From: Phyllobates terribilis
Taxonomy: Eukaryota
Length of the DNA stretch: 64,000 nucleotides
Assembly (NCBI RefSeq): GCF_046119375.1
Contig: NW_027362769.1
Coordinates: 381,362,001-381,426,000 of the forward strand
Reading direction: 5' to 3'
Under the pieces are notes generated by a model that was not told the DNA's origin, ran no database searches, and saw only the letters and a list, made by a program, of their open reading frames with translations. Shown here piece after piece: positions 1-60,950 of this stretch. The position numbers and the translations under genes are program-made. How positions within the stretch are numbered: the stretch's first letter is position 1; every line of letters starts with the position of its first letter.

Positions 1-15
1 CCGAAAAATACAGTA
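1..15. mobile_element. Right terminus of a Tc2/pogo-like MITE (element extends off the window)
   Basis: ccgaaaaatacag|ta is identical to the right end of the TA-flanked MITE at 59789-59803. Confidence 0.55.
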
Positions 16-2358
16 ATTATATATATACAGCTGGTATAACCTGGGCATCTCCCGTATATATTTATATATGTACAGCTGGAATAACCTGGGCATCTCCTGT
101 ATATAATTATATATGTACAGCTGGTATAACCTGGGCATCTCCTGTATATAATTATATACTGTATGTACAGCTGGTATAACCTGGGCACCTCCTGTATATA
201 ATTATATATGTACAGCTGGAATAACCGGGGCATCTCCTGTATATAATTATATACTGTATGTACAGCTGGTATAACCTGGGCACCTCCTGTATATAATTAT
301 ATATGTACAGCTGGTATAACCTGGGCATCTCCTATATATAATTATATATGTACAGCTGGTATAACCTGGGCATCTCCTGTATATAATTATATATGTACAG
401 CTGGTATAACCTGGGTATCTCCTGTATATAATTATATATGTACAGCTGGTATAACCTGGGTATCTCCTGTATATAATTATATATGTACAGCTGGTATAAC
501 CTGGGCACCTCCTGTATATAATTATATATGTACAGCTGGAATAACCGGGGCATCTCCTGTATATAATTATATACTGTATGTACAGCTGGTATAACCTGGG
601 CACCTCCTGTATATAATTATATATGTACAGCTGGTATAACCTGGGCATCTCCTATATATAATTATATATGTACAGCTGGTATAACCTGGGCATCTCCTGT
701 ATATAATTATATATGTACAGCTGGTATAACCTGGGTATCTCCTGTATATAATTATATATGTACAGCTGGTATAACCTGGGCATCTCCTGTATATAATTAT
801 ATATGTACAGCTGGTATAACCTGGGCATCTCCTGTATATAATTATATATGTACAGCTGGTATAACCTGGGTATCTCCTGTATATAATTATATATGTACAG
901 CTGGTATAACCTGGGCATCTCCTGTATATAATTATATATGTACAGCTGGTATAACCTGGGCATCTCCTGTATATAATTATATACTGTATGTACAGCTGGT
1001 ATAACCTGGGCACCTCCTGTATATAATTATATATGTACAGCTGGAATAACCGGGGCATCTCCTGTATATAATTATATACTGTATGTACAGCTGGTATAAC
1101 CTGGGCACCTCCTGTATATAATTATATATGTACAGCTGGTATAACCTGGGCATCTCCTATATATAATTATATATGTACAGCTGGTATAACCTGGGCATCT
1201 CCTGTATATAATTATATATGTACAGCTGGTATAACCTGGGTATCTCCTGTATATAATTATATATGTACAGCTGGTATAACCTGGGCATCTCCTGTATATA
1301 ATTATATATGTACAGCTGGTATAACCTGGGCACCTCCTGTATATAATTATATATGTACAGCTGGAATAACCTGGGCACCTCCTGTATATAATTATATATG
1401 TACAGCTGGAATAACCGGGGCATCTCCTGTATATAATTATATACTGTATGTACAGCTGGTATAACCTGGGCACCTCCTGTATATAATTATATATGTACAG
1501 CTGGTATAACCTGGGCATCTCCTATATATAATTATACATGTACAGCTGGTATAACCTGGGCATCTCCTGTATATAATTATATATGTACAGCTGGTATAAC
1601 CTGGGTATCTCCTGTATATAATTATATATGTACAGCTGGTATAACCTGGGCATCTCCTGTATATAATTATATATGTACAGCTGGTATAATCTGGGCATCT
1701 CCTGTATATAATTATATATGTACAGCTGGTATAACCTGGGTATCTCCTGTATATAATTATATATGTACAGCTGGTATAACCTGGGCATCTCCTGTATATA
1801 ATTATATATGTACAGCTGGTATAACCTGGGCATCTCCTGTATATAATTATATACTGTATGTACAGCTGGTATAACCTGGGCACCTCCTGTATATAATTAT
1901 ATATGTACAGCTGGAATAACCGGGGCATCTCCTGTATATAATTATATACTGTATGTACAGCTGGTATAACCTGGGCACCTCCTGTATATAATTATATATG
2001 TACAGCTGGTATAACCTGGGCATCTCCTATATATAATTATATATGTACAGCTGGTATAACCTGGGCATCTCCTGTATATAATTATATATGTACAGCTGGT
2101 GTAACCTGGGCATCTCCTATATATAATTATATATGTACAGCTGGTATAACCTGGGCATCTCCTGTATATAATTATATATGTACAGCTGGTATAACCTGGG
2201 TATCTCCTGTATATAATTATATATGTACAGCTGGTATAACCTGGGCATCTCCTATATATAATTATATATGTACAGCTGGTATAACCTGGGCATCTCCTGT
2301 ATATAATTATATATGTACAGCTGGTATAACCTGGGTATATTCTGTATATAATTATATA
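14..2358. repeat. 45-bp AT-rich minisatellite (tatataattatatatgtacagctggtataacctgggcatctcctg), ~51 units, with ~870-bp higher-order structure
   Basis: Direct periodicity; variant units recur at 870-bp spacing (572/1442, 982/1852, 1077/1947). Confidence 0.97.
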
Positions 2359-2573
2359 CAGTACAGACCAAAAGTTTGGACACATCTTCTCATTTAAAAA
2401 TTTTTCTGTATTTTCATGACTATGAAAATTGTACAAAAAAGGGGGATACGTGGCACTCCTTGAACTTATGGGTGCTCAGATAGGATTCCACTCCAATTAA
2501 TGAAAAGTAAGAATCTGGCACTCCCAATTTCAGTGAAAAGATTTCAAAAACTATTTTTTATTATCATGATTCA

Positions 2574-2619
2574 TTAGAGTTAACGTTTCGGCCTCATTCG
2601 GCCTTCATCAGAACTGTAA
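2574..2619 (-). ncRNA. Minimal type I hammerhead ribozyme motif (mirror copy)
   Basis: Exact reverse complement of 2971-3016. Confidence 0.78.
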
Positions 2620-2970
2620 ATACAATTGACAAGAAATACATATGAGTATAAATTCCATGTTTCAACATATGTAACAAACAGTTAATACATATATGAATCA
2701 AGTTTTAAAGGAAATAATTACAAAGACAATATACAAAAAAAAGGAAACAGAGAAATAATTAATCAAAACTAGTTCTTAGTATACTTAGTATACTATACTA
2801 TACTAGTATACTAAGAACTAGTTTTGATTAATTATTTCTCTGTTTCCTTTTTTTTGTATATTGTCTTTGTAATTATTTCCTTTAAAACTTGATTCATATA
2901 TGTATTAACTGTTTGTTACATATGTTGAAACATGGAATTTATACTCATATGTATTTCTTGTCAATTGTAT

Positions 2971-3016
2971 TTACAGTTCTGATGAAGGCCGAATGAGGCC
3001 GAAACGTTAACTCTAA
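2971..3016 (+). ncRNA. Minimal type I hammerhead ribozyme motif
   Basis: Stem I ttacagtt/aactctaa (7 of 8 pairs), core CUGAUGA plus extra A, stem II ggcc-gaatga-ggcc, GAAA, palindromic stem III ACGU, predicted cleavage after GUU. Confidence 0.78.
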
Positions 3017-3444
3017 TGAATCATGATAATAAAAAATAGTTTTTGAAATCTTTTCACTGAAATTGGGAGTGCCAGATTCTTACTTTTCATTTTATGAAAA
3101 TTGTACATTCACACTGAAAGCATCACAACTATGAATTAACACATGTGGAATTATATACTTAACAAAAAAGTGTGAAACAACTGAAAATATGTCTTATATT
3201 CTAGGTTCTTCAAAGTAGCCACCTTTTGCTTTGATGACTGCTTTGCACACTCTTGGCATTCTCTTGATGAGCTTCAAGAGGTAGTCACCGGAAATGGTTT
3301 TCACTTCACAGGTGTGCCCTGCCAGGTTTAATAAGTGGGATTTCTTGCCTTATAAATGGGGTTGGGACCATCAGTTGTGTTGTGCAGAAGTCTGGTGGAT
3401 ACACAGCTGATAGTCCTACTGAATAGACTGTTAGAATTTGTATT

Positions 3445-4497
3445 ATGGCAAGAAAAAAGCAGCTAAGTAAAGAAAAACGAGTGGCCATCATTATTTTAAG
3501 AAATTAAGGTCAGTCAGTCTGAAAAATTGGGAAAACTTTGAAAGTGTCCCCAAGTGCAGTTGCAAAAACCATCAAGCGCTACAAAGAAACTGGCTCACAT
3601 GAGGACCGCCCCAGGAAAGGAAGACCAAGAGTCACCTCTGCTTCTGAGGATAAGTTTATCTGAGTCACCAGCCTCAGAAATCGCAGGTTAACAGCAGCTC
3701 AGATTAGAGACCAGGTCAATGCCGCACAGAGTTCTAGCAGCAGACACATCTCTACAACAACTGTTAAGAGGAGACTTTGTGCAGCAGGCCTTCATGCTAA
3801 AATAGCTGCTAGGAAACCACTGCTAAGGACAGGCAACAAGCAGAAGAGACTTGTTTAGGCTAAAGAACACAAGGAATGGACATTAGACCAGTGGAAATCT
3901 GTGCTTTGGTCTGATGAGTCCAAATTTGAGATCTTTGGTTCCAACCACCGTGTCTTTGAGCGACGCAGAAAAGGTGAACGGATGGACTCTACATGCCTGG
4001 TTCCCACCGTGAAGCATGGAGGAGGAGGTGTGATGGTGTGGGGGTGCTTTGCTGGTGACACTGTTGGGGATTTATTCAAAATTGAAGGCATACTGAACCA
4101 GCATGGCTACCACAGCATCTTGCAGCGGCATGCTATTCCATCCGGTTTGCGTTTAGTTGGACCATCATTTATTTTTCAACATGACAATGACCCCAAACAC
4201 ACCTCCAGGCTGTGTAAGGGCTATTTGACCAAGAAGGAGAGTGATGGGGTGCTACGCCAGATGACCTGGCCTCCACAGTCACCAGACCTGAACCCAATCG
4301 AGATGGGTTGGGGTGAGCTGGACCGCAGAGTGAAGGCAAAAGGGCCAACAAGTGCTAAGCATCTCTGGGAACTCCTTCAAGATTGTTGGAAGACCATTTC
4401 CGGTGACTACCTCTTGAAGCTCATCAAGAGAATGCCAAGAGTGTGCAAAGCAGTCATCAAAGCAAAAGGCAGCTACTTTGAAGAACCTAGAATATAA
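3445..4497 (+). pseudogene. Tc1 transposase (DD38E) with 4 in-frame stop codons
   Basis: MARKKQLSKEKR start, GRPR linker, WSDES, HDNDPKH...SPDLNPIE; 38 residues between the second D and E; single frame with premature TAA/TGA/TGA/TAG. Confidence 0.93.
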
Positions 4498-4659
4498 GAC
4501 ATATTTTCAGTTGTTTCACACTTTTTGTTAAGTATATAATTCCACATGTGTTAATTCATAGTTTTGATGCCTTCAGTGTGAATGTACAATTTTCAAAGTC
4601 ATGAAAATACAGAAAAATCTTTAAATGAGAAGGTGTGTCCAAACTTTTGGTCTGTACTG

Positions 4660-4866
4660 TATGTACATCTGGTATAACCTGGGTATCTCCTGTATATAAT
4701 TATATATGTACAGCTGGTATAACCTGGGTATCTCCTGTATATAATTATATATGTACAGCTGGTATAACCTGGGCATCTCCTGTATATAATTATATATGTA
4801 CAGCTGGTATAACCTGGGCATCTCCTGTATATAATTATATATGTACAGCTGGTATAACCTGGGCAT
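4660..4866. repeat. Continuation of the 45-bp minisatellite right of the Tc1 insertion
   Basis: Same unit, in register with the left array across the TA duplication. Confidence 0.95.
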
Positions 4867-5379
4867 GTTCTGGTACATATAATATAATATAACACCATCA
4901 GTAAGCACCAAATAGAAGTATATATTTTACAGTACAGCGGTTTGTCACATATATTCTTTTTACAGTGCATATATGATATATTATTTCTTATAATAACATT
5001 TTTATATTTCTCCATCTTTATAGAATAACACAAAGAACAATCCTATCGGGCTACAGAGAATGGAGGCGGCTCCGGTCACAGTGAGCCAGGACCCTTCACA
5101 ATACAGTGTAAATGTTATGCTACCATTCATACTGAATATTACAGATAATAGCGCGTCCCGTTCACCCGTCGTTACGTCACAGTTCTTCATTTTGTAGATA
5201 AAAAAAAAAAAAATCTGGAGCCTTAACCCAATTCACCCCAATGTGCCGCTCCTCTTGTTACCCTATCAGGAAGCTGAGATATGAGGAGCTGTTTCTACAC
5301 AGTAATCCATACAAATAACTCCTTATATCTCAGAATCCGGGACTTAAAGGGAAAGTGTCATCAGAAAATTATCAATTGT

Positions 5380-9108: not shown

Positions 9109-20718
<11,610 letters not shown>

Positions 20719-23471: not shown

Positions 23472-23890
23472 CAGTACAGACCAAAAGTTTGGACACACCT
23501 TCTCATTTAAAGATTTTTCTGTATTTTCATGACTATGAAAATTGTACATTCACACTGAAGGCATCAAAACTATGAATTAACACATGTGGAATTATATACT
23601 TAACAAAAAAGTGTGAAACAACTGAAAATATGTCTTATATTCTAGGTTCTTCAAAGTAGCCACCTTTTGCTTTGATGACTGCTTTGCACACTCTTGGCAT
23701 TCTCTTGATGAGCTTCAAGAGGTAGTCACCGGAAATGGTCTTCCAACAATCTTGAAGGAGTTCCCAGAGATGCTTAGCACTTGTTGGCCCTTTTGCCTTC
23801 ACTCTGCGGTCCAGCTCACCCCAACCCATCTCGATTGGGTTCAGGTCTGGTGACTGTGGAGGCCAGGTCATCTGGTGTAGCACCCCATCA
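23472..23890 (-). mobile_element. Truncated copy of the DD38E Tc1 (TIR plus transposase C-terminus)
   Basis: TA-cagtacagacc TIR; minus strand encodes DGVLHQMTWPPQSPDLNPIE...FEEPRI*, near-identical to the 2359-4659 copy. Confidence 0.93.

Positions 23891-53496: not shown

Positions 53497-60950
<7,454 letters not shown>

What the first reader, a model, noticed from the sequence alone, without database searches (positions are those of the whole stretch)
157..2358. Transposon excision scars amplified as satellite variants at the same TA where an intact Tc1 still sits
Seen: the normal unit reads attata-TA-tgtacag. Eight units instead read attata-TA-CTG-TA-tgtacag (TACTGTA at 157, 252, 572, 982, 1077, 1442, 1852, 1947). 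The intact Tc1 is inserted at exactly that unit TA (attata-TA|cag...ctg|TA-tgtaca). All eight variants are followed by the same linked SNP (gggcaCctcc), and they recur in ~870-bp higher-order register. The unit after the resident element carries a different allele (gggtatct). Established: Sleeping Beauty/Tc1 excision in vertebrate cells leaves TA-CAG-TA or TA-CTG-TA. Inference: one germline excision footprint was multiplied by satellite turnover, and a separate insertion hit the same unit position. The array would then be both a recurrent target and a fossil record of transposition.
Basis: partly seen in the sequence, partly recalled or inferred. Interest (0 to 1): 0.75.

Follow-up and report, generated by a model that had tools for sequence, protein, structure and literature searches.

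The report
Tc1 excision scar copied through a satellite
A frog satellite array carries eight identical 5-base inserts that look exactly like the scar a Tc1/Sleeping-Beauty-type transposon leaves when it jumps out, copied along with the repeat, and a dead Tc1 sits at the same position of a neighbouring unit; it is a tidy textbook example, not a new mechanism.

Summary
The 45-bp array (14-2358) has 50 anchored units. Forty-one full units are exactly 45 bp, and eight are 50 bp with the same insert, reading TA-CTG-TA at the stated coordinates. There is no other indel in the array.

The scars sit in a higher-order repeat of 18-19 units (825/870 bp) whose copies are 99.6% identical. Eight scars therefore amount to about one mutational event that was later amplified.

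A Tc1 element (2359-4659, TA duplication, CAG...CTG ends, Sleeping-Beauty-like transposase) lies at the same unit TA. That TA is the only one of nine in the unit that fully matches the published Tc1/SB target core AYATATRT.

The scar reading is the best explanation (about 0.7). It rests on one event and cannot be told apart from a microhomology deletion of a Tc1. No filled, empty or TA-CAG-TA alleles could be retrieved.

"Intact Tc1" is wrong. The element has four in-frame stops and a nested 658-bp palindromic insert. A separate insertion versus a local hop is unresolved.

The same scan noted a similar TA-CAG-TA case on another piece of this genome (s1-218038), which I did not test. The mechanism is textbook, so interest is modest.

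The parts
14..2358 (+). 45-bp satellite array, left part (about 52 units), ending at the Tc1 insertion
   Evidence: TRF period 45, 51.4 copies, 92% matches; unit table
157..163 (+). scar 1, TA-CTG-TA (unit type B*)
252..258 (+). scar 2, TA-CTG-TA (unit type D*)
572..578 (+). scar 3, TA-CTG-TA (unit type D*)
982..988 (+). scar 4, TA-CTG-TA (unit type B*)
1077..1083 (+). scar 5, TA-CTG-TA (unit type D*)
1442..1448 (+). scar 6, TA-CTG-TA (unit type D*)
1852..1858 (+). scar 7, TA-CTG-TA (unit type B*)
1947..1953 (+). scar 8, TA-CTG-TA (unit type D*)
115..939 (+). higher-order repeat copy 1 (18 units, 3 scars)
   Evidence: 99.6% identical to copy 2 apart from one 45-bp unit
940..1809 (+). higher-order repeat copy 2 (19 units, 3 scars)
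1810..2358 (+). higher-order repeat copy 3, partial (2 scars); diverges in unit order after about 325 bp
2357..2358 (.). left TA target-site duplication
2359..4659 (+). resident Tc1 (SB-like, long inverted repeats), coding-dead and interrupted
   Evidence: ends CAGTACAGACC.../...GGTCTGTACTG; inverted repeats; Pfam HTH_Tnp_Tc3_2 and DDE_3; SB100X 5cr4 E 3.6e-48
2436..3093 (.). nested palindromic insert inside the Tc1 left inverted repeat, flanked by a 14-bp direct duplication (2422-2435 and 3094-3107)
   Evidence: arms 2499-2785 and 2805-3091 are 100% complementary; boundaries read against the uninterrupted copy at 23472
3445..4497 (+). transposase reading frame, 350 codons, four in-frame stops (codons 21, 26, 73, 138), no frameshift
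4660..4661 (.). right TA target-site duplication
4660..4866 (+). remainder of the same satellite array (4.6 units) to its right boundary

Best explanation
A Tc1/Sleeping-Beauty-type element once sat at the last TA of ATTATATA|TGTACAG in one unit of this 45-bp satellite and was later lost. Most likely the transposase excised it with 3-nt staggered cuts and end joining followed. This left the duplicated TA plus three terminal transposon bases, TA-CTG-TA, a net gain of 5 bp. The scar arose upstream of a unit carrying the 24C allele.

Unequal exchange or duplication then spread the scar-plus-24C block to three places of an 18-19-unit higher-order repeat. Amplification of that repeat to about 2.7 copies gave the eight scars seen. 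Eight scars are therefore about one transposition event.

The resident Tc1 at 2359-4659 entered the equivalent TA of another unit, either as an independent insertion or as a local re-insertion. This happened because that TA is the unit's best match to the family's target preference. The copy has since decayed.

Shown: the anatomy, the higher-order repeat, the match of site and letters, and the SB-like transposase. Inferred: that a Tc1 ever occupied the scar site, the 3-nt stagger of this family's cleavage, and the order of events.
For: - Exact 7-bp canonical footprint at a TA, with a net gain of 5 bp, and the only indel in 50 units.
- Canonical SB footprints are TACAGTA or TACTGTA (PMC6943129).
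- The Tc1 family in the window ends in CAG/CTG, at three loci.
- Its catalytic domain aligns to SB100X at E 3.6e-48.
- The scar TA is the only one of the unit's nine TAs that matches all 8 positions of the core AYATATRT of the SB consensus RCAYATATRTGY (consensus from PMC2577343).
- A short Tc1 derivative at 58285-58602 sits in a 12/12 site with the same core ATATATGT.
- Family-wide junction flanks in four sequencing runs are (TA)n-rich (table 7).
- The insert is not a tandem duplication, and only 18 of 34,816 possible 5-bp insertion products of the unit are footprint-like.
- Six other arrays in the window (about 560 units) show only 1-4 bp insertions, mostly homopolymer or tandem, and none of this type.
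- Higher-order repeat copies are 99.6% identical, and each complete copy carries three scars, always followed by 24C.
Against: - Everything rests on one independent mutational event, found post hoc.
- No allele or orthologue with a Tc1 at a scar position was seen, and there is no TA-CAG-TA counterpart in this array.
- No other genomic copies of the satellite could be retrieved.
- The read-laying output was swamped by Tc1 copies, with most rows hidden.
- CTGTA is also the reverse complement of TACAG two bases downstream and a copy of CTGTA 17 bases upstream, so a templated origin is not excluded.
- The identical product can arise without transposase, through a 3-bp (TAC) microhomology deletion of a Tc1.
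- The 3-nt stagger is known for SB, not for this frog family.
Confidence: 0.7

Rival explanations
1. The 5-bp insert has nothing to do with a transposon. It would be a replication template switch or repair error that copied nearby sequence, either an inverted copy of TACAG two bases downstream or a direct copy of CTGTA from CCTGTATATA 17 bases upstream. It then spread with the higher-order repeat. On this view the resemblance to a footprint and the Tc1 at the same TA are coincidence, helped by that TA being the favoured target anyway.
For: Both candidate templates are present in the unit. Only one independent event needs explaining. If two of the nine TAs (unit positions 41 and 43) are the favoured sites, the Tc1 sharing the position has a chance of about one in two.
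Against: The insert is not a tandem duplication. No microhomology supports the direct-copy jump. The inverted copy would need a 5-bp stem with a 2-nt loop. All other insertions in about 560 units of six other arrays are 1-4 bp and mostly slippage-type. All seven positions of the canonical footprint match, as does the AYATATRT target context; AYATACWGTATRT is expected 0.04 times in the window.
Confidence: 0.17
2. A Tc1 did occupy the site but was removed without transposase. A spontaneous deletion would have joined the TAC at the left junction (TA plus the first C of the element) to the TAC five bases from the right end, which gives the identical TA-CTG-TA.
For: This family's ends read TA-CAGTACAG... 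and ...CTGTACTG-TA, so the junctions themselves contain TACAGTA and TACTGTA and offer a 3-bp microhomology.
Against: A precise 1.6-kb or longer deletion through 3 bp of homology is far rarer than transposase excision for an abundant family. Tc1 contig depth here is in the millions in all four runs.
Confidence: 0.08
3. The scars are several independent excisions at the same hot TA, not one scar amplified.
For: Scars follow two different upstream unit types: B (consensus) and D (11A, 18G).
Against: All eight have the same middle base and the same downstream 24C allele, and they lie in strict register in higher-order repeat copies that are 99.6% identical. Independent events should give a mix of CAG and CTG.
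Confidence: 0.05

Closest known systems
Canonical Sleeping Beauty / Tc1-mariner excision footprint (TACAGTA or TACTGTA), as described in PMC6943129
   Same: It is the same 7-bp product at a TA and adds 5 bp net. The middle trinucleotide equals the transposon terminus. The associated transposase is an SB homologue.
   Different: Here the footprint is inferred from a germline genome sequence, with the neighbouring satellite units serving as the 'empty site' reference. It was not observed after an experimental excision, and it was then multiplied eight-fold by repeat amplification.
Tc1/SB palindromic AT-rich target-site preference (Tc1 CAYATATRTG; SB RCAYATATRTGY; table in PMC2577343)
   Same: The occupied TA and the scar TA lie in ATATATGT, a full match to the 8-bp core. 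A second element in the window lies in a 12/12 site.
   Different: Nothing differs in mechanism. Because the target is repeated once per satellite unit, the array offers dozens of equivalent landing sites.
Higher-order repeat structure of satellite DNA, in which monomer variants are amplified as blocks
   Same: A diagnostic variant recurs in register at 825/870 bp, with 99.6% identity between blocks.
   Different: The diagnostic variant is a putative transposon scar, not a point substitution.

Membership tests
Canonical Tc1/SB excision footprint | TA-C(A/T)G-TA replaces a single TA (net +5 bp) | tested here: met
   Eight units read ATTATA-TA-CTG-TA-TGTACAG against ATTATA-TA-TGTACAG in all the 45-bp units
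Canonical Tc1/SB excision footprint | The retained trinucleotide equals the terminus of a transposon family present in the genome | tested here: met
   The Tc1 family ends in CAG...CTG at 2359/4659, 23472 and 58285/58602
Canonical Tc1/SB excision footprint | The site fits the family's target preference | tested here: met
   It is the only TA of nine in the unit with 8/8 matches to AYATATRT (consensus from PMC2577343)
Canonical Tc1/SB excision footprint | A filled allele or orthologue shows that an element occupied that very site | tested here: inconclusive
   Contigs of four runs were laid on 1810-4920, but the output was dominated by Tc1 copies and showed no informative joint. No other copies were retrievable
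Canonical Tc1/SB excision footprint | The transposase cleaves with a 3-nt stagger | not testable with these tools
   Only homology to SB100X is shown. The stagger is inferred from SB
Tc1/mariner element, SB-like IR/DR group (resident copy) | TA target duplication and terminal inverted repeats | tested here: met
   TA at 2357-8 and 4660-1. Inverted repeats 2353-2435/4583-4665, 3095-3168/4522-4595 and 3165-3302/4389-4526
Tc1/mariner element, SB-like IR/DR group (resident copy) | Transposase with a paired-like HTH and a DDE domain | tested here: met
   HTH_Tnp_Tc3_2 at 2.6e-09 and DDE_3 at 1.1e-06; 5cr4 at E 3.6e-48
Tc1/mariner element, SB-like IR/DR group (resident copy) | Intact and autonomous (open reading frame, uninterrupted ends) | tested here: not met
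   Four in-frame stops and a 658-bp nested insert in the left inverted repeat
Satellite higher-order repeat | Multi-unit blocks are more alike than neighbouring monomers | tested here: met
   Blocks are 99.6% identical. Self-identity is 0.90 at a shift of 870 against 0.84 at 45. Unit-type string

The most novel reading that the evidence does not exclude
The scar would be more than a passive marker. On this reading the double-strand break left by Tc1 excision inside the array was repaired from a misaligned sister or neighbouring unit, and that repair itself seeded the local duplications (scar plus 24C block, then the 18-19-unit block). In Tc1-rich frog genomes, transposon excision would then be a driver of satellite higher-order-repeat birth, with satellites whose unit contains ATATATGT acting as recurrent landing pads. 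A second note in the same genome (s1-218038) hints that the pattern recurs.
Probability: 0.08. Interest if true: 0.6.

Novelty: new member of a known kind. Interest (0 to 1): 0.33.

Why it matters
Germline excision footprints of vertebrate Tc1 elements are hard to document, because the pre-insertion sequence is usually unknown. A satellite supplies dozens of internal 'empty-site' references, so a scar can be read directly. Once the scar is caught in a higher-order repeat, it becomes a marker that orders transposition relative to array amplification.

If the pattern holds genome-wide, such arrays could be mined to measure excision versus insertion rates and target preference of the huge Tc1 population of poison-frog-type genomes. 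The mechanism itself (canonical footprint, AT-palindromic target, block amplification) is established, so this is a clean illustration and a usable idea for a survey, not a discovery of a new process.

Tried and rejected
1. Laying public runs on 1810-4920. All four runs are kept as Logan contigs. The Tc1 drew 50,000-110,000 contigs per run, and most rows for the satellite part were hidden.
   - No empty, filled or footprint polymorphism could be read, and no TA-CAG-TA row was shown.
   - The usable results were these: the satellite and the Tc1 family occur in three samples of organism A and in organism B; contigs cover the place beside the scar at 1851 in all four runs, including a variant A>G there; Tc1 flanks genome-wide are (TA)n-rich.
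2. Exact-pattern scan of metagenome contigs for the unit junction with 0-8 inserted bases: no hit.
3. Word search of the protein collection with the satellite's open minus-strand frame across a scar, hoping to reach other contigs of the satellite: no candidate.
4. Earlier findings searched by sequence: blank.
5. TACAGTA in the 35-bp satellite (13380, 16312, 18651, 19009) was considered as further scars and rejected. These are T>C substitutions in TATTATAGTAG with no length change.
6. Simple slippage was rejected because the insert is not a tandem copy of either flank.
7. Enrichment of TACWGTA outside the array and outside the Tc1 junctions: 13 found against about 16 expected, so none.
8. Literature searches for an amplified footprint in a satellite found no precedent. 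The library is incomplete.

Full report
**What is there**

TRF reports a 45-bp tandem array at 14-2366 and its continuation at 4660-4866. I split the left part at the anchor GTACA.CTGG, which gives 50 units. Forty-one full units are exactly 45 bp. Eight are 50 bp, and the last is cut by a transposon.

All eight long units carry the same insert, so that ATTATA-TA-TGTACAG reads ATTATA-TA-CTG-TA-TGTACAG. An alignment of the whole array to its consensus finds these eight 5-bp insertions and no other indel.

**Higher-order structure**

I coded each unit by its differences from the consensus, marking scars with an asterisk. The array reads:

- A B* C D* C E B F F C D* C E B F B B F B
- B* C D* C E B F B C G D* C H B F B I F B
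- B* C D* C E B J B F E B K [Tc1] L F B B

This is a block of 18-19 units (825 and 870 bp) present in about 2.7 copies. Each complete block holds three scars. Blocks 1 and 2 differ by three substitutions and one whole unit, so they are 99.6% identical.

Inside the block the motif C D* C E B F occurs twice, so there were earlier rounds of duplication. Every scar is followed by a unit with C at position 24 (GGGCACCT). Three units with 24C have no scar before them. Hence 24C is the older variant and the scar arose next to one such unit.

The most economical history is one mutational event spread by at least two rounds of block duplication. It also means that the statistical weight of the finding is that of one event, not eight.

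**The transposon**

An element spans 2359-4659 with a TA duplication (2357-8 and 4660-1). Its ends are CAGTACAGACCAAAAG... and ...CTTTTGGTCTGTACTG, and it has long inverted repeats.

Its 350-codon frame (3445-4497) gives Pfam HTH_Tnp_Tc3_2 and DDE_3. The catalytic part aligns to the Sleeping Beauty SB100X catalytic domain, PDB 5cr4, at E 3.6e-48.

The element is not intact. The frame has four in-frame stops, at codons 21, 26, 73 and 138. At all four of those places most contigs of the family in public runs read another letter (table 3: places 3505, 3520, 3661, 3857), so this copy has decayed.

The left inverted repeat is also interrupted by a 658-bp palindromic insert (2436-3093). The insert's arms are 100% complementary, and it is flanked by a 14-bp direct duplication.

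The pre-insertion site reconstructs uniquely as ATTATA-TA-TGTACA, which is the same unit TA as the scars. The flanking units carry private substitutions: K has 22T, 25A and 27T, and L has 6T and 22T. They differ from the scar haplotype at three sites within 32 bp.

**Is the insert a transposon scar?**

Canonical Sleeping Beauty footprints are the 7-bp TACAGTA or TACTGTA, that is, three terminal transposon bases between two TAs (PMC6943129, read). The insert matches all seven positions. Its middle letters equal the terminus of the Tc1 family in the window.

The TA it occupies is the only one of the unit's nine TAs that matches all eight positions of the core AYATATRT of the published SB target consensus RCAYATATRTGY (consensus from the table in PMC2577343). 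A 320-bp Tc1 derivative at 58285-58602 sits in a 12/12 match with the same core, ATATATGT. The flanks of the family's junctions in four sequencing runs are (TA)n-rich (table 7).

The insert is not a tandem duplication of either flank. Of 34,816 distinct products of a 5-bp insertion into the unit, only 18 look like a footprint, and only 2 do so at this TA.

As a baseline, I examined six other tandem arrays in the window, about 560 units in all. They show only 1-4 bp insertions, mostly homopolymer or tandem, with no 5-bp insertion and none of this form. TACAGTA strings in the 35-bp satellite are substitutions, not insertions.

**What keeps it from being proven**

It is one event, noticed after the fact. 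CTGTA is also the reverse complement of TACAG two bases downstream and a copy of CTGTA 17 bases upstream, so a templated repair error cannot be excluded.

This family's ends read TA-CAGTA... and ...TACTG-TA. A non-transposase deletion through the 3-bp microhomology TAC would therefore give the identical product.

I could not obtain other genomic copies of the satellite:

- The reads tool returned only Logan contigs and was swamped by Tc1.
- A metagenome pattern scan found nothing.
- A protein-word search with the satellite's open frame found nothing.
- A look-up of earlier findings by sequence found nothing.

One search does suggest that scar-bearing units exist beyond this array. Contigs in all four runs, three samples of organism A and one of organism B, cover the base next to the scar at 1851 with at least 27 letters to either contig end, including an A>G variant. 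I could not see those contigs' letters, so this is only suggestive. No TA-CAG-TA counterpart was listed, but most rows were hidden.

**Separate insertion or local hop**

The differing flank haplotypes fit either an independent insertion or a re-insertion of the excised copy into the equivalent TA of a nearby unit. The data do not decide between them. The 'recurrent target' is what the known target preference predicts for a motif repeated once per unit.

**Comparison and verdict**

The thing works like a canonical Tc1/SB footprint caught in a satellite higher-order repeat. Four membership features were tested and met: form, terminus, target context and an SB-like transposase. The defining proof, a filled allele at the same site, was inconclusive, and the cleavage stagger is not testable here.

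Literature searches found no described case of a footprint amplified as a satellite variant, but every component is textbook. An earlier unchecked note of this scan reports a TA-CAG-TA one satellite unit before a Tc1 on another piece of the same genome (s1-218038). I could not read that piece.

I rate the scar reading at about 0.7. I class the novelty as a new member of a known kind, and the interest as modest (0.33). Its main value is as a cue for a genome-wide survey of scars in satellites.

Noticed in passing
window 2436-3093 (flanks 2422-2435 and 3094-3107): A palindromic insert is nested in the Tc1 left inverted repeat. Its arms, 2499-2785 and 2805-3091, are 287 nt and 100% complementary, with 19 nt between them. 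It is flanked by a 14-bp direct duplication, ATGAAAATTGTACA.
   Followed up: partly
window 3165-3302 versus 4389-4526: The inner part of the Tc1 left inverted repeat is an inverted copy of the last ~110 bp of the transposase gene plus its 3' flank. The minus-strand ORF 3194-3304 encodes almost the same C-terminal peptide (...[32 protein letters not shown]) as the real gene.
   Followed up: no
window 9-15: TACAGTA sits directly before ATTATATATATACAGCTGG at the degenerate left edge of the array. It could be a TA-CAG-TA at another unit TA or mere chance. The window starts here, so the upstream context is missing.
   Followed up: partly
window 4928-4937: TACAGTACAG, 60 bp beyond the array's right boundary, equals TA plus the first eight bases of the Tc1 terminus, but the sequence after it is unrelated. 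No matching right end was found in the window.
   Followed up: partly
window 58285-58602 and 23472-about 23890: There are two more members of the same Tc1 family. One is a ~320-bp internally deleted (MITE-like) copy inside (TA)n/(TG)n sequence, at a 12/12 match to the SB target consensus. The other is a copy truncated after about 420 bp of the left end.
   Followed up: partly
window 3505, 3520, 3661, 3857: Each of the four nonsense codons of the resident transposase lies at a place where 66-97% of the family's contig depth in run X1 reads another letter. The stops therefore belong to this copy or a minority sublineage. Most differences from the family are C>T or G>A.
   Followed up: partly
window 9767-19017 and 53795-55269: Two arrays of the same 35-bp satellite (9.3 kb and 1.5 kb) lie 35 kb apart. 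The window as a whole is a mosaic of at least seven different tandem arrays.
   Followed up: no
window 1810-4920 in runs X9-X12 (organism B): A second organism label holds both the 45-bp satellite and the Tc1 family at high contig depth. It has family-level differences from organism A, for example at 3187, 3292, 3561 and 4399.
   Followed up: no
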